64,000 bases of DNA, from the IMG/VR virus record IMGVR_UViG_3300035181_000357, positions 62,001-126,000 of that record; one strand, written 5' to 3'. The position numbers and the translations under genes were made by a program. The notes beneath the pieces are model-generated. The model saw only the letters and a list, made by a program, of their open reading frames with translations, made no database searches and was not told the DNA's origin. Below, one piece after another: positions 3,424 to 54,370 of this stretch (within the stretch, counting starts at the first letter, position 1; each line of letters starts with the position of its first letter).

Positions 3424-3580
3424 GGAAAACTCCTTTTATATTTTGATGGGTCCGAACAGCCGAGATGGCGAGTTCTACATAGACTCATCGATTCATAATT
3501 AGAACATGAAGTAATTTTTATATTATTTTTACGTAAACGCATTGTTACTAGTTCTACGAAAATGATAAAGCCTGTATAGT

Positions 3581-3605
3581 AAAAAGGGGACCGAAGTCCC
3601 CTTTT
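3581..3605 (-). terminator. Rho-independent terminator after scaffold gene
   Basis: AAAAGGGGAC-TTCG-GTCCCCTTTTT. Confidence 0.9.
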
Positions 3606-3625
3606 CATGGTAAAAACATTATCGA

Positions 3626-9999: not shown

Positions 10000-10011
10000 C
10001 TAAATATCCTC

Positions 10012-10440
10012 TTATATAGTTCTATCAGATAACGATGTAAGAGAAGCAGGAGTTAGTGCTCTCAACGTTACCATCGCAGCCTGAATTCTATTGCCTATCT
10101 GTGTAGTGTAGTAGGTAGCAGCATGAACAGGATCTGCTGTGACCACATCTAGTGGTCCTAATTGTGCGGCAGTTTGGCCAGGAGCGGCCTGTGGGATAGC
10201 TTGGAAGAATCTTATTGCTTTAGAGCTCATTTCAGTAGTAAGTTTTACATAATAATCACTTGCAGTGGTATTGAAAGTGAAACCACTATCTATGAAAGTT
10301 CCCCCCAAGTTGATGAGGGGATCTCCGTAAGCAGCGATTCTTCGTTGATCATCAGCATCTGTGATATCACCAACAAATTTAGCATTCAGTTGAACACTTA
10401 CGATACTATTTTGATGAGATACTACTGGATGAACTAGCAT
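10012..10440 (-). CDS. Hypothetical structural protein
   Basis: GGAG RBS, co-transcribed after sheath. Confidence 0.6.
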   Translation of the reverse strand: MLVHPVVSHQNSIVSVQLNAKFVGDITDADDQRRIAAYGDPLINLGGTFIDSGFTFNTTASDYYVKLTTEMSSKAIRFFQAIPQAAPGQTAAQLGPLDVVTADPVHAATYYTTQIGNRIQAAMVTLRALTPASLTSLSDRTI

Positions 10441-10450
10441 GATCTACTCC

Positions 10451-13400
10451 TTAAGCCTTTGTGGTAACTTTGAGGGTTACGTTGATGTACAGTAGAGAGA
10501 AGACAGGCTTGAAGGCTACTGTGACATCTAGGACAGTAGGATCAGACTCGTTACGAGTAACTTGTAGACCCTTATAGGCTTCAATAATTTCTTGTTGAAC
10601 GAAGTTCTTCATGACAGAGTTCATCACGATCGTAACATCATTAACAAGAGCTCCGAGGTTCTTTCTTCCGATGAATTGATTGAGTTCCTTGCGGATCTTC
10701 TGTCTTACTTCATCAGAGATTGAGGTATTGGTTGGTTCCTGCGTGATAGGATTGCTCATATCAGTGGTTAGGTAGTGGCGAACAGTGAAGGCACCATTAT
10801 CCTCTATCAATACAGAGACTCCATCAGTTGCGATCTGATCCATGGTTGGATCGTCATATCTCTGGAGGAGACGCTCGAATCCGACCATCTTCTTACGAGT
10901 AAGAGTGGTAGCAGAATCGATTGCTGGATTGCCCTTCATACCTGCCATTGCAGCAGCTAGGAACTCACCACCAACAGCGTACTCAGAAGACTTACCATCA
11001 ACTTCTAGGCTGATGATTGCACCTGCTGGATATACAGCGACGACACGCTCTGACTTGATACTTTGAGCTCTTGATCTTGCATCTACTGGAGAAGTTCCAG
11101 TGCTGAAGCCTACAAAGCCCATAGCCTCTCCCTTATTACGAGGAGCAGCTTGTGTATTGAGGTGCTTGGCTAAGAATTGTTGAACACTCTTCTCAGTGTT
11201 TAAAGGCACAATAACAGAAGCCTTTGTGGTTCCACCAGTGATTGGACGAGCTAGAGAAGCAATACCATCGATGAAAGTCTGGTTAGATGCAATTGCTGAA
11301 CCAACTTGCTTCTTGAGCTGCATGCATCCGAGAGTGGTTGTACCATTCAGGACAGCAAGGCGAGCAGCGAGGGATAGCTTGTTTTCTACAGTAGGATTAC
11401 CATAAGCAGCATATACATCAGACAGGTTCGTGAAGATCTTTAACTCATAATCCTTATCGGTCTTTGCAGTCTTGAAGGATACATAGTAGAACTCACCAAC
11501 AGTTGGTTCTGCACCAGCCTTATTATAGGTGTTGATGAAGAGGTAATCATTTGCAGCCATTCCAAAGGTGGTCGATACCTTGGTACGGATACCAGGGATT
11601 GCAACAACTGGAACAGTAGAAGTGACATAGTGGACGCTCTTGCTTACGACGAATACTAGAGTGTCACCAGGAGCATAACGATAAGAGATTGGAGCGGTTA
11701 GACCATAGTCAGCAATGTTTGAGGCATTTGGATCCACGATCGTGACAGAGAATCCAGTGACAGAGTCGTTGTAAGTCTGACCGAGGTACCCGATACCAGC
11801 AGATCCACCAGTTACTAGGTTGGAAGATACAGTGTACTTGCTGCTGAATGCAGTATTTACATCAGGAGTACCACCAGCGAAGTTCAACTTAGCAGAAGTA
11901 GTAGCATTAGTAGAACCAGTACCAGTTAGTGTAGCAGTGATTAGTCCACCAGCAGTGGTTACTAGAGCACCAGCACCTAATGCAGCGTTTGCAGTGAAGA
12001 GGGCTACGATCTGGGTAAGGGTTCTTACAGTACCAGCACCATCAGTGATCTCTACAGAGACATCGTTACCAACGATAGTTAATGCAGCTGCATCTAATGT
12101 ATTTCCAGTGTTCTTGAACTGGATGGATACTGGAGTTACAGCAGAATCAAACTTATTGAATGTTCTGAAAGTGATACCAGTCTGAGCAGTAGTGTTAGTT
12201 GCCTGAGTTCCAGGAGTCTGAAGATAGCTCTCTCCAGTTGTAGCGAAGGTTAAGGTTACGACCTCTTCCTCGGCACCAGCAACAATCTTGGCATCAGAGA
12301 AAGTATTAGGCCACAGAATACCACCAGAGGAGGTGAAGACTGGGTCAGCTACAGTGTGAGTAGATTGATTGACAGTTGGGATCTGAAGATCGTTCTTATC
12401 CCAGATAGAGTAAGAACCCTGTCCGGTTACGCCAGGAACTTGTACCTTGACCTTGAACTTGTTATCAGCAAGACGAGACTTGAAGTATGTTACATAGACA
12501 CTTCCAGTTGCAGGAGGATTGAAGAGAGTTACTCTCTTATTTGCTCCATCAACTGAAGAGATGGTTACAGGAACTAGAGCAGCAGTTGGAGTAGCTCTGG
12601 TGTAGGCTTTTACATAAGCAGGATTATCGGTTACTCTTGATAGACCAGATCCAGTAGTAGGAGCATCCTTAAGAGTAAATACGTTGTTGATTCCATTCAC
12701 TGAACCAGTTGCTAACTCAAGGTAGACCTTATCATCCACGAGAGTGGCGATGATGTGAGAAGCATCGAAGGCGGTGAATCCACTAGATTGTAGACCAGCA
12801 GAAGCTGATACGGAAGCTCCCCACTGAATTTTATCACCCTCTAGGACATAGTCGATAGTGTTGATGAAGTCATCTCTATCAGGGGAGAATCCACACTTTA
12901 AGATCTCAGTAATATTTTCAGCAGGTAGGAAGTCGAAAGTATCCTGATAGGTGTTGGTGAAATAGGTAGTTAGTAAGGTCGAACCAAAAGCTACATCCCC
13001 ATTTAGAGTTATTAAACCATTTAAACCATCTACTGACGTAACACCAACGGCAGAACCGTTAACAGTTACTTTGACGTGAGCAGGGAGGTTGGTTACAACA
13101 CCACCGTTTGAACCATCTACGATAGGTAGGTTCTTGACCTTGAAGACCTTGCTAGTGCTCTGGCCTTCTCCACCAACGAATGGTGCAGAAGTAGCAGCGA
13201 CAGCAGCAGAACCACCACTAAGAGTGGCAGTTACCTGGATCAAACCACCAGAGGCAGTGATGATTCCAGTGTTGATTAAGGTAGCGAGTTCAGCGATAGT
13301 TCTATGAACAGGAACGGCAACGGTTCCCTTGACTAATTCGATTGAGATAACATCTGTACCCTGCCCACTGATGGCTAGAGTGTCAGATTTAGGAGCACCG

Positions 13401-13981
13401 AGGGTCTCAGTGAAAGCTACGGTAACATTATTCCCTGCGAAGCCTGGCTTCTCTAACTTGAGAGACAGGTTACCAGCCTGGGCTACTAGGGTTGCAAACT
13501 TAGGAATCTGGACGCTGAGATCTTCATCAGTTACTAAGTCATCACTTCTTTTGAAGAAGTAACTAGTTCTTAGATCAGAACCAGGGAGGAGAATAACATC
13601 GATTAGGAATTTTCCTGTGGCGCCATCTAAGGTCGAGACACTAATAGGATTCCCATCAACGGTTACAGAGATATCAGTTGGTGTGTTTGTAGTAGTTCCA
13701 CGACCATCCCCATTAACAATTGGGAAGTAGGCAACCTGGAATTCTCGCTTAACACCATCGACTTGGTCACTTAGATTTTCTAAGACCTTTCTGTCGTCTG
13801 ATGAAGAACTAGAACCTCTGTGGAGTTCCGCATTATTAGAGGTTTTAAATTCTTCTCCTTCTCCGAGAAGGACAGTGATACGAGCATCTCCGAAGAGTGA
13901 AGTACCAGCATCTTCGGTAGTAAGAGTAGTGTAGACACCGGGTTGGGCGTATTGATCAAAAAGAGCCATGCTTTTCTCCAT
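10451..13981 (-). CDS. Tail sheath protein with large repeated insertion domains
   Basis: N-terminal YAQPGVYT; C-terminal sheath signature (FLAAAMAG, FTVRHYLTT, FIGRKN, VTVAFKPVFSLLYINVT). Confidence 0.9.
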   Translation of the reverse strand: MEKSMALFDQYAQPGVYTTLTTEDAGTSLFGDARITVLLGEGEEFKTSNNAELHRGSSSSSDDRKVLENLSDQVDGVKREFQVAYFPIVNGDGRGTTTNTPTDISVTVDGNPISVSTLDGATGKFLIDVILLPGSDLRTSYFFKRSDDLVTDEDLSVQIPKFATLVAQAGNLSLKLEKPGFAGNNVTVAFTETLGAPKSDTLAISGQGTDVISIELVKGTVAVPVHRTIAELATLINTGIITASGGLIQVTATLSGGSAAVAATSAPFVGGEGQSTSKVFKVKNLPIVDGSNGGVVTNLPAHVKVTVNGSAVGVTSVDGLNGLITLNGDVAFGSTLLTTYFTNTYQDTFDFLPAENITEILKCGFSPDRDDFINTIDYVLEGDKIQWGASVSASAGLQSSGFTAFDASHIIATLVDDKVYLELATGSVNGINNVFTLKDAPTTGSGLSRVTDNPAYVKAYTRATPTAALVPVTISSVDGANKRVTLFNPPATGSVYVTYFKSRLADNKFKVKVQVPGVTGQGSYSIWDKNDLQIPTVNQSTHTVADPVFTSSGGILWPNTFSDAKIVAGAEEEVVTLTFATTGESYLQTPGTQATNTTAQTGITFRTFNKFDSAVTPVSIQFKNTGNTLDAAALTIVGNDVSVEITDGAGTVRTLTQIVALFTANAALGAGALVTTAGGLITATLTGTGSTNATTSAKLNFAGGTPDVNTAFSSKYTVSSNLVTGGSAGIGYLGQTYNDSVTGFSVTIVDPNASNIADYGLTAPISYRYAPGDTLVFVVSKSVHYVTSTVPVVAIPGIRTKVSTTFGMAANDYLFINTYNKAGAEPTVGEFYYVSFKTAKTDKDYELKIFTNLSDVYAAYGNPTVENKLSLAARLAVLNGTTTLGCMQLKKQVGSAIASNQTFIDGIASLARPITGGTTKASVIVPLNTEKSVQQFLAKHLNTQAAPRNKGEAMGFVGFSTGTSPVDARSRAQSIKSERVVAVYPAGAIISLEVDGKSSEYAVGGEFLAAAMAGMKGNPAIDSATTLTRKKMVGFERLLQRYDDPTMDQIATDGVSVLIEDNGAFTVRHYLTTDMSNPITQEPTNTSISDEVRQKIRKELNQFIGRKNLGALVNDVTIVMNSVMKNFVQQEIIEAYKGLQVTRNESDPTVLDVTVAFKPVFSLLYINVTLKVTTKA

Positions 13982-14066
13982 TTTCAGTTATACAACTAAG
14001 GTATATGAAATTCTAATCCTTCACTATAGATAAGGCGAAGTCATTATCTATCTGTTGTTGACCAAA

Positions 14067-21986: not shown

Positions 21987-22014
21987 TAAAAGGGTGGGGA
22001 CGATACCCCACCCT
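21987..22014 (-). terminator. Terminator after 822-aa fibre-like gene
   Basis: AGGGTGGGG-loop-CCCCACCCT then TTTT on minus strand. Confidence 0.85.
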
Positions 22015-22033
22015 CTATGATACTCGTTATTCT

Positions 22034-24502
22034 TTAGATAATCTTATAAGTACGTTCTAGAGCGGACACGAGTGAGAAGTTAATACCCTTTGCTCTTGTA
22101 ATCGTACCAGTGGAAATAACATACTGTGCAGTGGTAGTACCAATTGCCACAATAGTGACAGCTGCGGTTGTACCAGGAGTACGTCCACCCTGAACATTAC
22201 CATCGTAGTCGAAAGTGAATGACACAGAAGAACCACTAGGTGACTGAGGTACAGAACCTGTGATATCTGCGGTAGAACCATCTTTGACGATGATAGCAAG
22301 AGGAGTTCCAAAGTCTTGACCACCAGTTGTGGTAGTGAAGAACATGGTGTACTTAGCAGAAGTATCGGTAGACAAGTTGGAGTTGAAGTTGATAGTACCT
22401 GCTGCTACATATGGGTATGAGCGAGATCCACCAGATGCATCCTTGAACACAGTGTTATTGATATCATTGGAGTTCAAGTTATCGATGTGGAGATTGTTGG
22501 TCAAGCCGTTAGGAGCGGTGTATGACATGAGCAAGTCGGTAATGTCACCACGAGAGGTTCCAACACCCCAATCAATATCTCCAGTCTGACGAAGCTGGTG
22601 CTGAATGAATTGGTAGCAGTCAGCGGCTAAAGCACCGTTACCAGTGAGCTTCCAGTTGAAGGAGTATACCACACTGTTAATGGTTCTCTTGAAACCAGCG
22701 TTAGCCGTAAAGGAGGTTCCTGCAATAGCTGTCGGGCCTTCGTTTACGATTGTGTCAGTAGCGATGAAGGTGAGAGTTGTAGTCCCAACAGTAGCAACAG
22801 TGAACGAACCGTTGTTTGAGGCCGTTCCGGTAATAGTAAATACATCACCAATTGCAACGCCATCACCAGAGAACGAACCGGACTGACGAGTTAAGGTCTT
22901 GCTTGCTCCGGTGAATTGGTAAGTGGTTCCAAAAGAGGAGAGGGTTCTAGCAGTCTTCATATACTGAAGATACATTCCAGGCTTAACTACAGAGAATGAC
23001 ACAGAAGATTGAGTAGTGAATTGAAGATCAGTGGTATTTAGTGTTAAGACAGTTGCAGATGTCACAGAATTAACAGTATACACGCCAGTGAATGCACCAG
23101 ATGTAATAAGTACCAGATCGTTAGGAGCAACACCAGCAGTAGTGAAGTTAGAAGAAGCAGAAGTTAGAGTACCTGCAACACCAGTTGTATTGGCCAGAGC
23201 ACCATCAGCTGCAGTTCTTGTAGTTCCAGTTAGGAAATAATATGGAGTGGTTACAGTGAATGTAACGCCAGATGCAGTACCGAAAGTGGTGAATTCAAAG
23301 TTACTAGCTAAAGTTATCTGAGTAGCAGAATCCACGGTGAGGATGGTGTAGGTTCCTACAGTACCACCAGCGGTGATCTGAAGACTATCCCCAGGAGCAC
23401 AACCAGCAGCAACGAATGCACCAGTAGCAGAAGTGAACTGAGCAGTACCATTGACCTGAACACCATCTGTCTTCTGAGTTACAATAGTCCTAACACCACG
23501 GAAGGTACTGGTACCCAAAATCTGACCATCTGTAGCAGTAATAGCGGTATCCGTTGCGTGGGCAAGAGGGAATCGATATGCCTGATAGGTCATCGTGCTG
23601 ACACCGATGTCCCCAATGGTTGACTGTGCGTACGATCTGCCTTTCTTACGAGCGAAGAGCTTTAAGTAGGTTCTGTAATCTGTTGGATTGTTGTAGGTTT
23701 GAATTGGTTCATTCACAACACCCTTGAAGGTCAAGTTAGCAGGAGTTGTGGTAGCAGAAGTCTGCTGGAAATAAACCTGAGTATCCGTATCAAGATAACC
23801 CAAGGTGATAATACCAGACCATTCCTTATTCGTAGTACCGTTTAGAATCTTTTCAGACCAACCAGCGGTACGAATCTTACGTCTTGTGTAGTTATCTTTA
23901 TATGCCCAAGCATCGTGGGATGCACCACCACCTATTTCGAACTGCTCAGGAGTGATAGGTTCATATGGGAATACGTGGCGGATAGTGTTGTCAGAATATC
24001 CAGTAACACCATTCATGGTATCAGCTAGCCACTGACCCTTTGAATAAGAATACAGACACTGCTCGGTCAAGCCATCACGGATAACACCAGTTGCAAGACC
24101 TGACCCAGACTGGTCAGCTGTGTTCGAACCATCCTTGTGTACTTCGTATACTACGACAGCTGTTTCTCCCACGAAGCCAGTGAAGTCAATCCAAGTAGCA
24201 TCTGAATTTGTCTTAAGGGTCAGAACGGTAGCAGCGACAGTCTTAACTACATAGTGTCCAGCATCGTTACCAGACTTGATGACTAAGATGTCACCGACAG
24301 CCACAGGAGTCGTAGTGAACGCCCCAGTGGTATCTGTAAATGTAATACCTGCCGCAGTCGTGGCGTTGCCAGCTGCTGTCGCCTTGTTGGCACCTGGAGA
24401 AGCCACGAGAGCTCCGACAGGATAGGTAGATACCTTCTCTTGTTTAAGGTTGTATACTACTTGATTTCTGTCAAGTAGGGAAATATCGGTAATTACAGCC
24501 AT
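22034..24502 (-). CDS. Large Thr/Gly-rich virion fibre/appendage protein with repeated beta modules
   Basis: About four copies of F...(G/N)D.L.I.(S/A/G)G...G.(Y/F).V..V...T.LT(L/F); highly expressed codon bias. Confidence 0.6.
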   Translation of the reverse strand: MAVITDISLLDRNQVVYNLKQEKVSTYPVGALVASPGANKATAAGNATTAAGITFTDTTGAFTTTPVAVGDILVIKSGNDAGHYVVKTVAATVLTLKTNSDATWIDFTGFVGETAVVVYEVHKDGSNTADQSGSGLATGVIRDGLTEQCLYSYSKGQWLADTMNGVTGYSDNTIRHVFPYEPITPEQFEIGGGASHDAWAYKDNYTRRKIRTAGWSEKILNGTTNKEWSGIITLGYLDTDTQVYFQQTSATTTPANLTFKGVVNEPIQTYNNPTDYRTYLKLFARKKGRSYAQSTIGDIGVSTMTYQAYRFPLAHATDTAITATDGQILGTSTFRGVRTIVTQKTDGVQVNGTAQFTSATGAFVAAGCAPGDSLQITAGGTVGTYTILTVDSATQITLASNFEFTTFGTASGVTFTVTTPYYFLTGTTRTAADGALANTTGVAGTLTSASSNFTTAGVAPNDLVLITSGAFTGVYTVNSVTSATVLTLNTTDLQFTTQSSVSFSVVKPGMYLQYMKTARTLSSFGTTYQFTGASKTLTRQSGSFSGDGVAIGDVFTITGTASNNGSFTVATVGTTTLTFIATDTIVNEGPTAIAGTSFTANAGFKRTINSVVYSFNWKLTGNGALAADCYQFIQHQLRQTGDIDWGVGTSRGDITDLLMSYTAPNGLTNNLHIDNLNSNDINNTVFKDASGGSRSYPYVAAGTINFNSNLSTDTSAKYTMFFTTTTGGQDFGTPLAIIVKDGSTADITGSVPQSPSGSSVSFTFDYDGNVQGGRTPGTTAAVTIVAIGTTTAQYVISTGTITRAKGINFSLVSALERTYKII

Positions 24503-45705: not shown

Positions 45706-46617
45706 CTACTGCAGTTCTTCAGAAATATCATACGTTTCTGGGACAGAATCTTGAACCCTTATCTCTTCCAACTCTACTCTCTGGAGTAATGAAATACCAG
45801 AAGTATCTGAATTTGCACTTGAATCAAAAATTTGATCGATGATCCTTTTCTCTTCTCTTATAAAAGATGTCTCCATCAAAACCGGATCATCCTCTAAGAA
45901 GGATAGAGCTCTTAGACCACATCGCAGACTGTGATACTTCTTGTCATCACCACAACAGGTTTCTAACTCTTCCATGAAACCTTCTGCATCCTCTTTTGTC
46001 TTAGCTAGGAAAGTCATCCCAACCTTTCTACCATCCTCTATAATCTTATACTTTAACCACGACGTATCCATCGTAGTTATCCTTTGGGATTCCAGGATCT
46101 CAAACTGTTCCCTGATTCTTTCTCTTATAATATCTGAAGTGGAATGCATATACATCTCAGATGGGATAGGAGGATTCTTTGCCTGAACTTTCTTCAATTG
46201 GAGAATCAAAGAATATGTGTCTACCAGAGTTGGATCTTGATCTTTTGGTAAATTCTTTATCTCGAAAGAGAGTCTTGATTCCAACTCTTCCCTTGTCAAG
46301 AACAATAGAAGCATATCTCTTCGAAGTCTTGCATTAGGAAAGTCATACAAGTCATTAAATCTAGAGACTAGCTTATCTCTAACATCTTCTAGAGTTTTCT
46401 TTAGAAGACTACTATTTTTCAGTAGTAATTTTCGTCTATAGATTAGGTCATTTACTTTTGGAAATACGACATCTCGATAGTGAAGAGCTACACATTGAAG
46501 TGTTGTCTCTTTTATCTCTTTGCCTGAATCTAACCTAAATCTCAAACCAAACCTCTTCCTACTTAATACGGGATTAAGTATGACCTGTAGTACAAATTTA
46601 ATCGATTCAAACCTCAC
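45706..46617 (-). CDS. Orphan protein directly downstream of the structured RNA; candidate partner of the TnpB-like locus
   Basis: 303 aa, basic N-half, acidic C-terminus; no confident family. Confidence 0.55.
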   Translation of the reverse strand: MRFESIKFVLQVILNPVLSRKRFGLRFRLDSGKEIKETTLQCVALHYRDVVFPKVNDLIYRRKLLLKNSSLLKKTLEDVRDKLVSRFNDLYDFPNARLRRDMLLLFLTREELESRLSFEIKNLPKDQDPTLVDTYSLILQLKKVQAKNPPIPSEMYMHSTSDIIRERIREQFEILESQRITTMDTSWLKYKIIEDGRKVGMTFLAKTKEDAEGFMEELETCCGDDKKYHSLRCGLRALSFLEDDPVLMETSFIREEKRIIDQIFDSSANSDTSGISLLQRVELEEIRVQDSVPETYDISEELQ

Positions 46618-46626
46618 AATTTTAAA

Positions 46627-46846
46627 CTCTGAAGACCAGAGATTGCCTAGTATGCACCCAAGAGATAAGTCTCGGGGTTATTGATCAAACCCAGCTGGCT
46701 CACATACGTGGCCACTGTAAAGCCGCAGCAGCTTGGGAAAGAATCAACGATACAGACTTGTTGATTCCAACCACCTCCTTAGATACCACTCTTGGATATC
46801 CTCAGTTTGTTTAACTGAAACTTTGAATAAAGGAGACTCAATAACC
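46627..46846 (-). ncRNA. Multi-stem structured RNA (about 220 nt)
   Basis: Nested helices: 46676-84/46838-46, 46775-80/46830-35, 46741-48/46760-67, 46690-96/46730-37 plus small hairpins; G-U pairs favour minus strand. Confidence 0.65.
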
Positions 46847-46857
46847 AAATGGATCGT

Positions 46858-46877
46858 TTATTATGATTATTGTTATT
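46858..46877 (-). repeat. 20-nt exact copy of 48246-48265 (candidate guide)
   Basis: TTATTATGATTATTGTTATT on + strand at both positions. Confidence 0.95.
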
Positions 46878-46965
46878 TTCTTTCGACGTTGCGTTTGGGA
46901 CAAAGTCCTCAGCAGAACCAAGGATGAGTAGAGGGAGGCACCTTAGGTGCTTCTAATTCTGCATA
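46878..46965 (-). ncRNA. Candidate omegaRNA-like scaffold overlapping the 3' end of the TnpB-like gene
   Basis: GCAGAATTAG/TTGGTTCTGC stem enclosing GCACC-TAA-GGTGC, then GGAC-TTT-GTCC, then the 20-nt repeat. Confidence 0.45.
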
Positions 46966-48075
46966 TCCTAGTTCCATACACGAAGAAGCTAGAACCTGAC
47001 TTCTAAGCCTGTTCTTTCCTCTTCGTTTTGAGATGATACCAGTATCCTGGATAATCTTAAACGCGATAGCACCTTCCGCCTGTCGCGATCTCCCAATCCT
47101 TTTGATGATCATATCGATATCGTCAAGATTGTTCTTAGTGTCTTTCTTATGTTTACTAAGGAAGACGAATCTACAATTCTTAGAAATCTCTTTAAAAAGA
47201 GAATTAAGATACTTGTAGTGGTTCTTTCGAACCCTATCTGCTTTGACACTGATCTCTAATTCCTTACCGGTATCGAGGCTCAGAACCTTTATACTTAGAT
47301 GATCGTTGTCAGCAGCAATACCAATATCTAAGGAACCAGAAGGTGTAGTATCAGTTGCTTCGACGGATTTCAAGACCATATAATAATATCTGTGATCTCG
47401 TCTTACAACCTTTATACTCTTAACATCTGCCTTTTTAATACTGGATGGTATGGTTACAGAAGTTTTTAATTTCTGTAACCTGGTTTCTAGTTCTTTTATC
47501 AGGTTCTTGGTCTTGGTCTCATATCTACTAAATGTGATATGGATAGGATCTTCATCCTCTTCATAATCCCAAGACATCTTACTCAATCTCGAGGTCTCTA
47601 ATTCAGTCTTCGATTTCAATTCCATGCTAATCTTACTAAGTTTATTCTGTAAGATTCGTCTCGTTTTCCCAGTGGCTACATCAGAACGTTCCTGGTTTCG
47701 CTTCATTTCATAGCGTCTCTTGTTTTCGATTCGCTTCAGATTCAGATATTCGGTTTCAAGTTTCGTGTTCAGAGTTTTTAGTCTTTTGTCTGTTTTCGGT
47801 CGCAGGTGTCGTTGGGTGAGTTTACGTTTACGTTGGTAGTCTTTCAGGCATATCTCGACGATCTCTCTATCCCGTACTAACATGGAGGCTACATCTATGC
47901 ATAGCGCATTGGGTTCAGAAGAAAAAGATTCGGGGGTTAGGTTCTGGATTCGGCCACCAGAAGCGTCTATACCCACTAGACAATTCCACACCATTCTGTA
48001 GATCAAGAACTGCTGACCATAGTCGCCAGTTCTAACAAATGATCTTCTTACAACAGATGACATGAACAATCTCAC
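46909..48075 (-). CDS. Probable nuclease-dead TnpB/Cas12f-derived protein
   Basis: 388 aa, very basic; RMVWN helix, KSIKVVRRDHRYYYMV, DIGIAA..LSLDTGK, HYKYLNSLFKEISKNCRFVFLS, RSQVLASSCMELG..EAP occur in TnpB order with RuvC D/E/D apparently replaced. Confidence 0.5.
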   Translation of the reverse strand: MRLFMSSVVRRSFVRTGDYGQQFLIYRMVWNCLVGIDASGGRIQNLTPESFSSEPNALCIDVASMLVRDREIVEICLKDYQRKRKLTQRHLRPKTDKRLKTLNTKLETEYLNLKRIENKRRYEMKRNQERSDVATGKTRRILQNKLSKISMELKSKTELETSRLSKMSWDYEEDEDPIHITFSRYETKTKNLIKELETRLQKLKTSVTIPSSIKKADVKSIKVVRRDHRYYYMVLKSVEATDTTPSGSLDIGIAADNDHLSIKVLSLDTGKELEISVKADRVRKNHYKYLNSLFKEISKNCRFVFLSKHKKDTKNNLDDIDMIIKRIGRSRQAEGAIAFKIIQDTGIISKRRGKNRLRSQVLASSCMELGYAELEAPKVPPSTHPWFC

Positions 48076-48137
48076 AAGTTAGGAACTGATACACTCAAGG
48101 TCAAGTAAATTCTTAATTCTACAAGAAGTTATCGATA

Positions 48138-48412
48138 TCCTGTATAGTAAGAACAACAAGGATGACCGTAACCTGTAACAACCTGTATTCTTAATAATTA
48201 TAATAGATAACTGATAATAAGTAACAATTATAACTTATAATGATGTTATTATGATTATTGTTATTAGGAATTAAGGACATGTTGTACACCTGTATCTAAT
48301 TGTTGTTGTAGCTGACAGGTTGTGTTCTCAATTTTGGACAATTTATACTTTCTGAATCATGTTTTTAAAGTCTCTCTATTACCAGGTACTTAAGAACACT
48401 TCATACACAGGT
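48138..48412. promoter_or_regulatory. Divergent control region and candidate replication origin
   Basis: Only strand switch in the window; about 80-nt AT-rich core 48187-48266; ACCTGT at 48171, 48181, 48288 and inverted ACAGGT at 48315, 48407. Confidence 0.55.
48246..48265. repeat. 20-nt exact copy of 46858-46877 (candidate target)
   Basis: Identical 20-mer, same orientation. Confidence 0.95.
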
Positions 48413-48458
48413 ATAAAATTAGGATTTAGAACTTGTCACCTTATTGAAGAGGTGACCT

Positions 48459-48929
48459 ATGTGGTTTGTATCGATCCTAAATTTCATGAAGCCAAAGATG
48501 CCTGAGTTCATTAAGAAAGCTTTCTTTGAAGATGATGGTAAGACTGTTTCGAGTTCCCGACTTATGGGAGGTCTGACCTTCGCTGTCCTACACTTCTGTA
48601 ACGTGACCTTGGTCGGAGCTATTTCGTGGGGGATCTGGTCGGTGATCAAGATTCATCCTATTGACAATATGGCTCTCACTTCTTTACTAGGTTCCATAAA
48701 GTACCTAGCTCTGTTATACCTAATCTTGGCTGCAACTGCTCTAGCCTTGTATGGTATCAACATCTGGAAGTATGTGTCTGCCATCAAGAATGGTTTGAAT
48801 AATGACGTCGATGGTTTAGAGGAAGAAGTGACTAAGACTTCTACCCAGGTTGAATCTACAAAGACTGTGACAACTCCTACCAAAGCTCCTGAAGTTCAGG
48901 TAGAGAAACCAACAAAAGACGATTTGTAG
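48459..48929 (+). CDS. Holin-like membrane protein
   Basis: SSSRLMG followed by two hydrophobic helices and a charged tail. Confidence 0.55.
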   Translation: MWFVSILNFMKPKMPEFIKKAFFEDDGKTVSSSRLMGGLTFAVLHFCNVTLVGAISWGIWSVIKIHPIDNMALTSLLGSIKYLALLYLILAATALALYGINIWKYVSAIKNGLNNDVDGLEEEVTKTSTQVESTKTVTTPTKAPEVQVEKPTKDDL

Positions 48930-48959: not shown

Positions 48960-49424
48960 ATGGCTATTGCCAGAAAACGTGATGACAATCTTATCGAAAT
49001 CCTGATAGGGAAAGATCTATATGTTTTTAAATCTCTGTCTTGGTTGGATGAGATGGTTGTTAAAGAAGTTGATGGTATTTCCAGAGAACGTCAGTTGATG
49101 GCTAGAGCAACCATATCTGTCTCAAACAACCTGACCTTCACTTATGAAGAGAAACTGAAACTGATGAGAGCTATCCCACTCGCTATCTTTAAAAGAGTGT
49201 ATACTATCTATAAGGCTTTAGAGGCTGATGGTAGAAGACCATTTAAAACCATCCACTTATATATTGCACCAGAAGTCACTAAAGTCTTGGGAAAGATCAA
49301 GATGGAAGACGAGGATATGGAAGAGACTCTGAATGCTGTCTTTGGAGACGATGAGGCTGAGGTCCGAGAAACTGAGGAACTAATTCTTAAGAATTCTGGG
49401 TTGAAGGGAGCCACAAAAATCTAA
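48960..49424 (+). CDS. Probable tail assembly protein
   Basis: Upstream of tape measure; context only. Confidence 0.45.
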   Translation: MAIARKRDDNLIEILIGKDLYVFKSLSWLDEMVVKEVDGISRERQLMARATISVSNNLTFTYEEKLKLMRAIPLAIFKRVYTIYKALEADGRRPFKTIHLYIAPEVTKVLGKIKMEDEDMEETLNAVFGDDEAEVRETEELILKNSGLKGATKI

Positions 49425-50482
49425 TGGCTACTGCTGGTACTCAATTAATGGAGAAGATTAACAGTGGAGAGATTCAAACTGTTAAATCAGGTGTAACCAA
49501 GAAGATAAGACAAGATGTATCATCTGTCTTCGAAGAGATACTGGGAGTAGGAGCGAGAATTCGTCCTATCCTCTTAGATGGGTCTAGGATAGGGTGGATT
49601 CGTGGCCTTAGTGTTAACGAGAGAAAGTTGCTGGCCTCTTGGTTTAATGATCAGAATGAGTTAATAACTCAAGCTCTAGTATACTCTACATCGTTATCGA
49701 AAGAAGATATAGTTAATCTAAACTCATATGAATTTAGATCCTTGTTAAGACTAGCCAACATAATGAGCACAGCAGATGTCAGCCTGTACCCATACCTAGT
49801 TCCATATACTTCCACATCTAGTTCAGATGATTTGTGGCGAGCCTGTGGTTGTATAGTTCCTCAGTTCCTGAATAAAGATATAACTATGCCAGATAGTAAA
49901 ACTATACGAATACTGTGTAACTCTGATCATAGTAGATTCTGGGCAAGTCTATGCAGCAAAAGGGACCAAGCCTCTTCTGAATTATCCGGGAATTATGATG
50001 CAGCTATGGTAGCTGGTGCTATGGTGGGTAAGAGTGTTCAGAAGTATATAACTAATCTAAATAAGAGAGCCTTGTTGTTAGAGATAAATTCTGATAATCC
50101 ATGGAAGAACATCTCTACAATAGACCAGGCAGATTCCCTAGATCTGAATGATGGATGGGGCCACGCACATGAGGATTCGTCGGAAGCTGGCCTCTTAAGA
50201 GAAGGTGAAGGTATGGTTGGGTTTGATAAACACGAACAATTCATGGAAACATTCTACGATCAGTATATGAATAGGCAGCAAAAGAAGACTGAAATAACTA
50301 AAAGAACCGAACAAGGGTTAATAGATGAGGTATCATCTATTATGACTGAAAAAGAAGTACAAGCTAGAGAACGAGATGTAGATAAAGAAAGTTCTAGAAT
50401 AAGACAGATGGCAGTAGATGAAGCTTCTAGTGCCTCAGATCGTATGGAACAAAAAGATAACATGACTTTCATTGTAGACTAA
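49424..50482 (+). CDS. Probable tail assembly protein
   Basis: TAATG-coupled; context. Confidence 0.45.
   Translation: MATAGTQLMEKINSGEIQTVKSGVTKKIRQDVSSVFEEILGVGARIRPILLDGSRIGWIRGLSVNERKLLASWFNDQNELITQALVYSTSLSKEDIVNLNSYEFRSLLRLANIMSTADVSLYPYLVPYTSTSSSDDLWRACGCIVPQFLNKDITMPDSKTIRILCNSDHSRFWASLCSKRDQASSELSGNYDAAMVAGAMVGKSVQKYITNLNKRALLLEINSDNPWKNISTIDQADSLDLNDGWGHAHEDSSEAGLLREGEGMVGFDKHEQFMETFYDQYMNRQQKKTEITKRTEQGLIDEVSSIMTEKEVQARERDVDKESSRIRQMAVDEASSASDRMEQKDNMTFIVD

Positions 50483-51124: not shown

Positions 51125-54370
<3,246 letters not shown>

What the first reader, a model, noticed from the sequence alone, without database searches (positions are those of the whole stretch)
48138..48412. 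Origin-like architecture at the transcription divergence point
About 380 nt non-coding, with an AT-rich core (48187-48266) built of TAA/TTA-like units. ACCTGT(A) boxes lie at 48171, 48181 and 48288 (variant 48138), with inverted ACAGGT at 48315 and 48407 (variant 48382). Genes point away on both sides. Iterons plus an unwinding element is the standard origin layout; the candidate RNA target lies in the AT core.
Basis: partly seen in the sequence, partly recalled or inferred. Interest (0 to 1): 0.6.

Follow-up and report, generated by a model that had tools for sequence, protein, structure and literature searches.

The report
RNA-guide target in phage control region
The AT-rich "origin-like" spacer of this jumbo phage holds a 20-base site that exactly matches a guide-like RNA segment encoded just after the neighbouring gene, whose protein has the fold of the RNA-guided nuclease TnpB, so the region is more likely an RNA-guided control site than a classical iteron origin.

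Summary
The sequence features are real: a 383-395 nt spacer at the main strand switch of a 210-kb phage contig, an AT core and five exact ACCTGT/ACAGGT hexamers (P about 0.001 against shuffles). The iteron-origin reading gets no independent support. The boxes are absent from six related phages whose spacers still align. Third-codon GC skew is zero in both arms, so the V-shaped skew only reflects gene orientation. No initiator gene is recognisable.

The conserved feature is different. The right edge of the AT core (48246-48265) is an exact 20-nt copy of a segment 31 nt after the stop of the adjacent gene P0001 (46858-46877). All seven lineages have such a 20-25 nt match. The sequence differs between lineages but always changes in both copies (shuffle maximum 12-14 nt). 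A TTCYY motif flanks only the spacer copy. P0001 models as a TnpB fold (best PDB match ISDra2 TnpB, Z 11.8) with degenerate RuvC motifs. The guide-like segment sits unpaired in a conserved, covarying RNA on the P0001 strand.

Best reading: a new, sequence-unrecognisable clade of nuclease-dead TnpB-like RNA-guided DNA binders that targets the phage's own divergent control region. Whether it represses, activates or opens an origin is not shown.

The parts
48064..48458 (.). Divergent intergenic region at the main strand switch of the phage contig (GC 0.30)
   Evidence: Homologous and alignable in L004/L005, L006 and L007 (mean column identity 62%). The same layout is found in L008, L009 and L010/L011.
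48246..48265 (-). 20-bp target site, identical to the guide-like segment. On the P0001-sense (minus) strand it reads AATAACAATAATCATAATAA. It is the only perfect match to the guide in the 210-kb contig.
   Evidence: Exact 20-25 nt matches occur in all 7 lineages, against a maximum of 12-14 nt in shuffles.
48266..48270 (-). TAM-like flank (TTCCT on the minus strand), directly 5' of the target on the non-target strand
   Evidence: The flank is TTCCT in the window, L004 and L010; TCCCT in L006; TTCTC in L008 and L009. L007 differs (TAATT). The motif is absent beside the gene-side copy in every lineage.
48187..48245 (.). Extremely AT-rich tract (GC about 0.15) on the TAM-distal side of the target, towards P0001.
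   Evidence: GC is 0.10-0.20 over the first 60 nt in all 7 lineages. A sigma-70-like hit TTGTTA-N16-TATTAT lies on the minus strand at 48227-48200, but its spacing is not conserved.
46909..48063 (-). P0001, 384 aa: a TnpB-fold protein (WED-REC-RuvC) with a long coiled-coil insertion, degenerate RuvC motifs and no zinc ribbon. Its family is very small.
   Evidence: AF2 model pLDDT 76.7. Best of 48,161 PDB chains is 8h1j_A ISDra2 TnpB, Z 11.8, 258 residues aligned over model 2-372. The nearest ESM Atlas shapes are OrfB_IS605/Cas12f1-like_TNB clusters, TM 0.45-0.48. There are no Pfam, PHROG or PDB sequence hits. Only about 6 credible relatives were found among 1.84 billion representatives.
46858..46877 (-). 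Guide-like 20-nt segment, 31 nt after the P0001 stop codon; unpaired in the consensus RNA fold
46878..46908 (-). Hairpin directly after the stop codon (46897-46908) with compensatory changes, followed by a conserved linker (CCAAACGCAA-like) leading to the guide
   Evidence: the stem pairs vary as GC/CG and AU/GC/GU across 7 lineages.
46546..46857 (-). Conserved structured RNA domain of about 300 nt, 3' of the guide. It matches no Rfam family and occurs once in the contig.
   Evidence: the P0001-sense consensus fold is -44.9 kcal/mol with 65 pairs, 32 of them compensatory, and 57 G-U cells; the antisense fold is -25.6 with 10 G-U cells. Rfam finds nothing. nhmmer finds a single copy.
45706..46545 (-). 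P0003, 279 aa (TTG start at 46545 behind an AGGAAGAGG ribosome-binding site). Function unknown. It always follows the RNA in all lineages.
   Evidence: The AF2 model is poor (pLDDT 46.7). Pfam, PDB and Atlas give nothing usable.
48171..48187 (+). Two tandem ACCTGTA boxes 10 bp apart. They are specific to this lineage.
   Evidence: They are not conserved as boxes in relatives.
48281..48320 (.). ACCTGTA box at 48288 and inverted ACAGGT at 48315. The 48288 box overlies a block that is conserved in relatives in a different form, the near-palindrome ATACCATTGTAT about 12 nt from the TAM.
48106..48156 (.). Conserved block holding TTCTTAAT and the 48138 'variant box' (CCTGTATAGTAA); candidate promoter region for P0001
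   Evidence: The same 12-mer recurs once, at window 3571, beside a terminator hairpin.
48388..48419 (+). Conserved promoter-like block (CTTAAGAAC ... CAGGTAT) that holds the ACAGGT box at 48407; candidate promoter of the rightward tail-gene operon
   Evidence: TTAAGA-N18-TAAAAT; conserved in relatives
48459..48929 (+). First gene of the rightward module (156 aa, two hydrophobic segments). The tail tape-measure gene follows at 51125-54370.

Best explanation
The spacer is the divergent control region between the phage's replication and nucleotide-metabolism arm (leftward) and its tail-gene arm (rightward). Its conserved core is not an iteron array. It is the DNA target of an RNA-guided protein encoded next door. 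P0001 is a highly diverged TnpB-family protein that has probably lost nuclease activity. A transcript running out of its 3' end carries a 20-nt guide (46877 to 46858). The inferred mechanism has three steps. The ribonucleoprotein recognises the TTCCT flank at 48270-48266. It pairs the guide with the plus strand of 48246-48265. This forms an R-loop at the edge of the extremely AT-rich tract. The most likely consequence is RNA-guided control of transcription from this region, in the manner of TldR repressors, including feedback on P0001's own operon because the target lies upstream of its own gene. Shown here: the fold, the guide-target identity and its co-variation in seven lineages, the flank motif, the RNA strand and its structure, and the uniqueness of the target. 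Inferred: binding, loss of nuclease activity, and the regulatory outcome. The ACCTGT boxes are a lineage-specific addition, possibly operators of some other factor, and not part of the conserved mechanism.
For: An exact 20-nt direct repeat brackets P0001. An equivalent exact repeat of 20-25 nt is present in all seven lineages, always 31-62 nt after the stop codon and in the upstream spacer. The sequences differ between lineages by substitutions and indels that are mirrored in both copies. Dinucleotide shuffles give a mean longest match of about 9 nt and a maximum of 12-14 nt. The rest of the spacer is only about 62% identical, and the proteins are 26-49% identical. A conserved TTCYY flank occurs only at the spacer copy, on the 5' side of the non-target strand as in TnpB and Cas12. 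P0001 has a TnpB fold: the top PDB match is 8h1j_A (Z 11.8, near full length), followed by Fanzor2, Cas12f and ISFba1 TnpB. Foldseek's top rows are Cas12f, Cas12k and TnpB, but weak. The nearest Atlas shapes are OrfB_IS605/Cas12f1-like_TNB clusters. One family member (P0015) keeps a CxxC...CxxGH zinc ribbon at the position where TnpB has one. Among the RuvC motifs, the first Asp is mostly kept, no conserved Glu is present, and the third position is an invariant Ser. This matches the TldR pattern of degraded active sites and lost zinc finger (10.1101/2023.11.30.569447). The guide is unpaired within a conserved, covarying RNA on the P0001-sense strand. The contig has one RNA copy and one perfect target. 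The geometry, with the target upstream of the system's own operon and the guide just downstream of the gene, is described for dCas12f-sigmaE loci (PMC13472631).
Against: There is no sequence-level link to TnpB: Pfam, PHROGs and a PDB profile search are all negative. The structural scores are moderate (rmsd about 6 A, TM below 0.5) and rest on a 7-sequence alignment. Known TnpB, TldR and Cas12 guide RNAs have the scaffold 5' of the guide. Here only a small covarying hairpin and linker lie 5' of the guide, the 3' end of the ORF shows no convincing conserved structure, and the large structured domain lies 3' of the guide. One lineage (L007) lacks the TTCYY flank. The target does not clearly overlap a conserved -35/-10 pair, and no promoter could be assigned with confidence. 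No RNA data exist: no RNA runs hold this sequence. The loss of nuclease activity is read from motif alignment, not from a structural superposition.
Confidence: 0.6

Rival explanations
1. Replication origin. The ACCTGT/ACAGGT boxes are iterons for an initiator, and the AT core is the DNA unwinding element from which bidirectional replication starts.
For: The spacer is AT-rich and sits at the major strand switch beside RNR, GyrB, an XPD/DinG-like helicase and a DnaB-like helicase. The hexamer cluster is over-represented. The cumulative GC skew has its minimum here, and non-coding skew changes sign. In Tunturiibacter phage Tunturi_5 the homologous junction lies beside an AAA+ DnaC-like loader, and its spacer has a 32-nt x 2 direct repeat.
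Against: The boxes are absent from six related spacers, and none of those has any over-represented box. The boxes are 6-7 nt with irregular spacing, unlike 17-22 bp iterons. GC3 skew is zero in both arms, so the skew minimum is explained by gene orientation. No initiator family was detected. The outer boxes belong to promoter-like blocks.
Confidence: 0.1
2. RNA-RNA antisense control. The leftward transcript carrying the 20-nt segment pairs with a rightward leader RNA transcribed through the AT core, and so controls the tail operon. This would resemble the c4 RNA of P1/P7 or the CI RNA of P4, where regulator and target co-vary. P0001 would not be needed for recognition.
For: Direct repeats in divergently transcribed arms would give complementary RNAs. 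Identity is perfect and co-varies. The segment is unpaired in a structured RNA. The distance from the target to the rightward gene start is fairly constant at 193-237 nt.
Against: It needs a rightward promoter upstream of 48246, which is not established. It explains neither the TnpB fold of the adjacent protein, nor the fixed position of the segment just after that gene's stop codon, nor the flank motif found only at the spacer copy.
Confidence: 0.12
3. The repeats are DNA-level sites: ends or a target duplication of a mobile TnpB cassette, or sites for excision of the P0001 segment, kept identical by recombination.
For: Direct repeats bracket a transposon-derived gene. Concerted change of the two copies could arise by gene conversion.
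Against: The same synteny holds in all lineages, down to about 26% protein identity. IS200/IS605 elements make no target duplication (established knowledge). No deleted form appears in contigs of four metagenomes, though that test is weak. The flank motif is asymmetric. No transposase gene lies nearby.
Confidence: 0.05

Closest known systems
TldR, TnpB-like nuclease-dead repressors (Wiegand et al., 10.1101/2023.11.30.569447; Xiao et al., 10.64898/2026.09.22.753285)
   Same: [quoted passage not shown]
   Different: No detectable sequence similarity to TnpB or TldR. The exact match is 20-25 nt, against mature guides of 9-16 nt. The target lies in the phage's own genome, upstream of the protein's own gene, at the central strand switch of a jumbo phage. 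A structured RNA domain of about 300 nt lies 3' of the guide instead of a scaffold of about 100 nt 5' of it. There is a long coiled-coil insertion and a conserved unknown partner gene (P0003).
dCas12f-sigmaE RNA-guided transcription systems (PMC13472631)
   Same: A nuclease-dead TnpB/Cas12f-lineage protein. Their 'category III' loci have the target upstream of their own operon and the guide RNA immediately downstream. The direction TAM, target, gene is the same as here. An AT/T-rich stretch follows the target.
   Different: No sigma factor gene is recognisable; P0003 has no detectable family. No transcription start data exist here. The hosts and lineage are unrelated.
Iteron-type origins (lambda ori, plasmid Rep/iteron origins, oriC with DnaA boxes and a DUE)
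   Same: An AT-rich tract flanked by short repeated boxes in both orientations, near replication genes, at a point of divergent transcription.
   Different: The boxes are short, irregularly spaced and not conserved among relatives. There is no initiator gene and no strand-compositional switch at third codon positions.
Co-varying phage antisense RNAs (P1/P7 c4 RNA, P4 CI RNA; from established knowledge, not tested here)
   Same: A short unpaired segment of a structured phage RNA matches a site elsewhere in the same control region, and regulator and target change together between relatives.
   Different: Those pair RNA with RNA on the same transcript, so they are inverted at the DNA level, and they need no TnpB-like protein.

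Membership tests
TnpB / TldR (RNA-guided TnpB-lineage proteins) | Bilobed WED-REC-RuvC fold | tested here: met
   The best PDB match is the ISDra2 TnpB ternary complex 8h1j_A: Z 11.8, 258 residues aligned, model 2-372. Fanzor2, Cas12f and ISFba1 TnpB also align near full length. The nearest Atlas shapes carry PF01385/PF07282. Scores are moderate and the model has pLDDT 76.7.
TnpB / TldR (RNA-guided TnpB-lineage proteins) | Sequence membership (Pfam OrfB_IS605 / Cas12f1-like_TNB) | tested here: not met
   No Pfam hit for any of the 7 members even at E 10. The PDB profile search gives only coiled-coil noise. PF07282 is absent from the whole contig. Only P0015 keeps a zinc ribbon at the right position.
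TnpB / TldR (RNA-guided TnpB-lineage proteins) | Guide next to the gene that matches a TAM-flanked DNA target | tested here: met
   Exact 20-25 nt matches occur in 7 lineages with mirrored changes. A TTCYY flank lies only at the target copy, in 6 of 7 lineages.
TnpB / TldR (RNA-guided TnpB-lineage proteins) | Scaffold of about 100-150 nt 5' of the guide, overlapping the 3' end of the gene | tested here: inconclusive
   Only a 5-bp covarying hairpin and a conserved linker lie 5' of the guide. The 3' end of the ORF gives a poor consensus fold (-7.45 kcal/mol, covariation term +1.36). The well-supported structure lies 3' of the guide.
TldR specifically | Inactivated RuvC triad | tested here: inconclusive
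   By motif and secondary-structure position, the first Asp is kept in 6 of 7 members, no conserved Glu follows strand 4, and an invariant Ser sits at the start of the last helix. No structural superposition or assay was done.
TldR specifically | RNA-guided DNA binding that represses a promoter | not testable with these tools
   No RNA runs hold the sequence. Promoters could not be assigned with confidence.
Iteron-type replication origin | Array of directly repeated initiator sites, kept in relatives (sequence may co-evolve) | tested here: not met
   There are five 6-nt boxes in this genome only. The six related spacers show no over-represented box (shuffle P 0.14 to 1.0).
Iteron-type replication origin | Adjacent initiator gene | tested here: not met
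   The neighbours are a TnpB-fold protein and an unknown protein.
Iteron-type replication origin | AT-rich unwinding element | tested here: met
   GC is 0.10-0.20 over 60 nt beside the target in all lineages.
Iteron-type replication origin | Strand-composition switch independent of transcription | tested here: not met
   Coding-strand GC3 skew is about 0 in both arms.
Iteron-type replication origin | Replication initiates here | not testable with these tools
   Only assembled contigs are available, so there is no depth gradient to read.

The most novel reading that the evidence does not exclude
An RNA-guided replication origin. The nuclease-dead TnpB-like protein and its guide form an R-loop at 48246-48265 that opens the adjoining AT-rich tract (GC about 0.15) for loading of the phage DnaB-like helicase, or provides the primer. 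P0001, the RNA and P0003 would then take the place that an initiator and a DnaC-like loader occupy at the homologous junction of the distant relative Tunturi_5. Origin specificity would be set by base pairing instead of by iterons.
Probability: 0.12. Interest if true: 0.95.

Novelty: new variant of a known kind. Interest (0 to 1): 0.77.

Why it matters
Nuclease-dead TnpB relatives acting as natural RNA-guided transcription factors were recognised only recently, and the roles of most clades are unknown. This looks like a further, independent clade. It is invisible to sequence-based family models, confined so far to a handful of uncultured jumbo phages from sediments and microbial mats, and aimed at the phage's own central control region between the replication genes and the tail genes. 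It would be a case of a lytic-type jumbo phage using an RNA guide on itself, for timing of gene expression or possibly for origin opening. The RNA also has an unusual layout, with the guide followed by a large structured domain, which bears on how guide RNAs of the TnpB lineage evolve. For annotation practice, the case shows that 'AT-rich core plus short repeats at a strand switch plus a skew minimum' is not enough to call an origin. Third-position skew and comparison with relatives removed most of that signal here.

Tried and rejected
- blastn of the region against GenBank phages found nothing, and tblastn with P0001 found nothing.
- Single-protein scans of IMG/VR for relatives of the two flanking genes found nothing. 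Relatives came only from the word search and identity look-ups.
- Pfam and PHROGs on P0001, P0003 and the first rightward genes gave no hits.
- P0001 and P0003 show no similarity to Tunturi_5 gp261 or gp262.
- Rfam finds nothing at gathering or relaxed thresholds, and no tRNA is present.
- I looked for a TnpB-style scaffold inside the 3' end of the P0001 ORF; it is not supported.
- The plus-strand reading of the RNA was rejected: weaker fold, few G-U pairs, and no conserved flank on that side.
- A search for further guide targets (up to 5 mismatches) and further copies of the RNA in the contig found none.
- I tested whether conserved blocks of the spacer are general promoter motifs of this phage. 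They do not recur, apart from one 12-mer at window 3571.
- The sigma-70 scan finds no more sites than in shuffles, and the candidate -35/-10 pair in the AT core lacks conserved spacing.
- The P0003 structure model is too poor to search (pLDDT 46.7). The Atlas feature search scores 0.76, which is chance level.
- Reads: only assembled contigs of four DNA metagenomes hold the region. There are no RNA runs, no deletion joint, and no variants in guide, target or boxes. No depth gradient could be read.
- No complex prediction was run, since no protein-protein binding is claimed.

Full report
**Setting.** The window is bases 62,001-126,000 of a 210,611-bp linear viral contig (CheckV completeness 69%, GC 41.5%). 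A simple gene map shows minus-strand genes from about 2 kb to 110 kb. From 110.4 kb to about 182 kb the genes are mostly on the plus strand. The finding lies exactly at this switch.

- Leftward genes: P0001 (46909-48063), a non-coding stretch, P0003 (45706-46545), ribonucleotide reductase, GyrB, an XPD/DinG-like helicase and a DnaB-like helicase.
- Rightward genes: small proteins, then the tail tape-measure gene at 51125-54370. Its only GenBank phage match is Tunturiibacter phage Tunturi_5, a 308-kb jumbo phage.
- The gene at 49424-50482 is 35% identical to Tunturi_5 gp259 (E 6e-71), so the divergent junction itself is homologous between these distant phages.

- Five exact ACCTGT/ACAGGT hexamers fall within 242 bp. 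This is the densest cluster of that hexamer in the contig.
- A G/C-containing hexamer class reaches five copies in about 0.1% of dinucleotide shuffles of the spacer.
- The spacer has the lowest GC (0.30) of the contig's large intergenic regions.
- The 'TAA/TTA units' are low-complexity AT sequence rather than a true tandem array.

**Test of the origin reading.**

- Skew. The cumulative GC skew does reach its minimum at window position about 48,000. Third codon positions, however, show no skew on the coding strand in either arm (-0.002 and -0.008). The asymmetry sits in codon positions 1-2 (+0.06 to +0.07), which makes it a coding-strand effect that must flip where the genes flip. Non-coding bases change sign weakly (-0.04 versus +0.09), but they are few and are transcribed leaders.
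- Relatives. Homologues of P0001 and P0003 led to six further lineages with the same gene order: L004/L005, L006, L007, L008, L009 and L010/L011.
- Their spacers align with the window's at 62% mean column identity. The boxes at 48171, 48181, 48288 and 48315 are not kept.
- None of the six spacers has any over-represented G/C-containing hexamer.
- The outer 'variants' at 48138 and 48407 are conserved only as parts of longer blocks that look like the two divergent promoters. These are TTCTTAAT...CCTGTATAGTAA on the left and CTTAAGAAC...CAGGTAT on the right, the latter scored as TTAAGA-N18-TAAAAT.
- The 48288 box overlies a block that relatives keep in another form, the near-palindrome ATACCATTGTAT.
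- No initiator family is detectable next door.

Iterons are therefore not a conserved property of this region.

**What is conserved.**

- A search of the contig with the spacer returned one extra hit, a perfect 20-mer 1,388 bp to the left. The copies are 46858-46877, which is 31 nt after the P0001 stop codon, and 48246-48265, the right edge of the AT core.
- Every related lineage has the same arrangement: an exact 20-25 nt direct repeat between a site 31-62 nt after the stop codon and a site in the upstream spacer.
- The repeat sequence differs among lineages by several substitutions and indels, and each change is present in both copies.
- Shuffled spacers give longest matches of about 9 nt and never more than 14 nt.
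- On the P0001-sense strand, the spacer copy is preceded by TTCCT, TCCCT or TTCTC in six of seven lineages. The gene-side copy never is.
- The site is followed, towards P0001, by 60-90 nt with GC 0.10-0.20 in all lineages.
- The distance from the flank to the rightward gene start is fairly constant (193-237 nt). The distance to the P0001 start varies from 91 to 345 nt.
- The contig holds no other site within four mismatches of the guide that lies outside a gene.

**The protein.**

- P0001 has no Pfam, PHROG or PDB sequence match.
- A profile search of 1.84 billion representatives found only about six credible relatives.
- An AlphaFold2 model built from the 7-sequence alignment (pLDDT 76.7) shows an N-terminal strand, a helical region, a long coiled-coil hairpin, a beta hairpin and a C-terminal RNase H-like domain.
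- Aligned against 48,161 PDB representatives, the best match is the ISDra2 TnpB-omegaRNA-DNA complex (8h1j_A, Z 11.8, 258 residues, model 2-372). Fanzor2, Cas12f and ISFba1 TnpB also align over nearly the full length. RuvC, RuvX and the resolvases match only residues 243-374.
- Foldseek ranks Cas12f, Cas12k and TnpB at the top, but weakly.
- The nearest ESM Atlas shapes are clusters carrying OrfB_IS605 and Cas12f1-like_TNB (TM 0.45-0.48).
- One family member (P0015) retains a CxxC...CxxGH ribbon where TnpB has its zinc finger. The others have lost it.
- At the expected catalytic positions, the first Asp is mostly present, no conserved Glu follows strand 4, and an invariant Ser replaces the last Asp.
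- This is the pattern described for TldR proteins. Here it is inferred from motifs only.

**The RNA.**

- The 363 nt between P0001 and the true start of P0003 are conserved in all lineages. The P0003 start is a TTG at 46545 behind a strong ribosome-binding site, and it matches the 279-aa gene call.
- The consensus fold is much better on the P0001-sense strand: -44.9 kcal/mol, 65 pairs, 32 with compensatory changes and 57 G-U cells. The antisense strand gives -25.6 and 10 G-U cells.
- The order along the RNA is stop codon, a 5-bp covarying hairpin, a conserved linker, the unpaired 20-nt segment, and then a multi-helix domain of about 300 nt.
- The 3' end of the ORF shows no convincing conserved structure.
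- Rfam has no match, and the contig has one copy.
- This layout differs from known TnpB, TldR and Cas12 guide RNAs, whose scaffold precedes the guide. The conserved flank on the 5' side of the non-target strand nevertheless fits TnpB/Cas12 polarity.
- This conflict is unresolved and is the main structural oddity.

**Mechanism.**

The best-supported reading is that P0001 with its adjacent RNA is an RNA-guided DNA-binding complex. Its single target is the flank-marked 20-bp site at the edge of the AT-rich tract in the phage's own divergent control region.

- By analogy with TldR, it would act on transcription.
- The geometry (target upstream of its own gene, guide just downstream, direction flank-target-gene) equals the auto-regulatory 'category III' loci of dCas12f-sigmaE systems, where transcription starts 46 bp downstream of the TAM. 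No sigma factor is recognisable here, and P0003 could not be classified.
- Repression, activation or a switch between the replication arm and the tail arm cannot be separated from sequence alone, because no promoter could be placed with confidence.
- An R-loop beside a very AT-rich tract next to helicase genes would also suit origin opening. In Tunturi_5 the same slot holds an AAA+ DnaC-like loader and a protein annotated as an initiator, though that annotation has no family support in my scans. I keep this as the novel case at about 0.12.

**Other data.** Four DNA metagenomes (sediment and microbial mat) hold near-identical contigs. They show no deletion joint between the repeats and no variants in guide, target or boxes. 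Single-base variants occur at 48036, 48120 and 48168 in one run. No RNA runs and no raw reads were available, so neither expression nor a coverage gradient could be examined.

**Verdict.** The iteron-origin interpretation is not supported by conservation or by third-position skew, though an origin is not excluded. The remark about an RNA target is right and turns out to be the key feature. The region is best described as the self-target of a new, highly diverged, probably nuclease-dead TnpB-like RNA-guided system of jumbo phages.

Noticed in passing
window 46546-46857 (minus strand): A conserved, covarying RNA domain of about 300 nt with no Rfam family lies 3' of the guide-like segment. A predicted long-range pairing of the linker CAAACGCAA with the ribosome-binding-site and start region of P0003 shows conservation but no covariation.
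   Followed up: partly
window 45706-46545: P0003 (279 aa, TTG start) follows the RNA in every lineage and has no detectable family. The longest-ORF start (GTG at 46617) and several database gene calls for its homologues are probably wrong.
   Followed up: partly
window 46909-48075: The source's gene call for P0001 is only 222 aa (P0004), against a 384-aa ORF supported by homologues. The plus-strand ORF 46733-46927 overlaps the RNA and is probably spurious.
   Followed up: yes
window 3571-3606: The 12-mer CCTGTATAGTAA of the spacer recurs once, directly beside a strong GC hairpin flanked by A- and T-runs (a bidirectional terminator shape) between two minus-strand genes. It may be a shared promoter or processing element.
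   Followed up: partly
genome about 193,298-193,500 (outside the window): Dense cluster of ACCTCC/GCACCC-type hexamers (up to 14 copies in 300 bp), the strongest short-repeat cluster in the contig. The contig region 183-195 kb also has several large intergenic regions of higher GC.
   Followed up: no
L006 13438-16972; L009 8302-12786: Relatives carry inteins in GyrB (L006) and in two unidentified genes beside the P0003 homologue (L009). DUF7487 genes (L006, L007) and a GIY-YIG gene (L010) are inserted near RNR and GyrB. This replication arm attracts mobile elements.
   Followed up: no
L003 9253-9326 (Tunturi_5 PP885688): The homologous divergent spacer of Tunturi_5 has a 32-nt direct repeat (88% identical, 42 bp apart) beside a gene annotated as replication initiator. 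That gene has no Pfam or PHROG support in my scans.
   Followed up: partly
window 48459-48929: The first rightward gene encodes a 156-aa protein with two hydrophobic segments and a Thr/Lys/Pro-rich tail. It is conserved at the head of the tail-gene arm in all relatives.
   Followed up: no
window 10001-14000 and 22001-24000: Positive plus-strand GC skew occurs inside the minus-strand arm (genes 10451-13981 and 22034-24502). Skew here follows gene content rather than arm.
   Followed up: no
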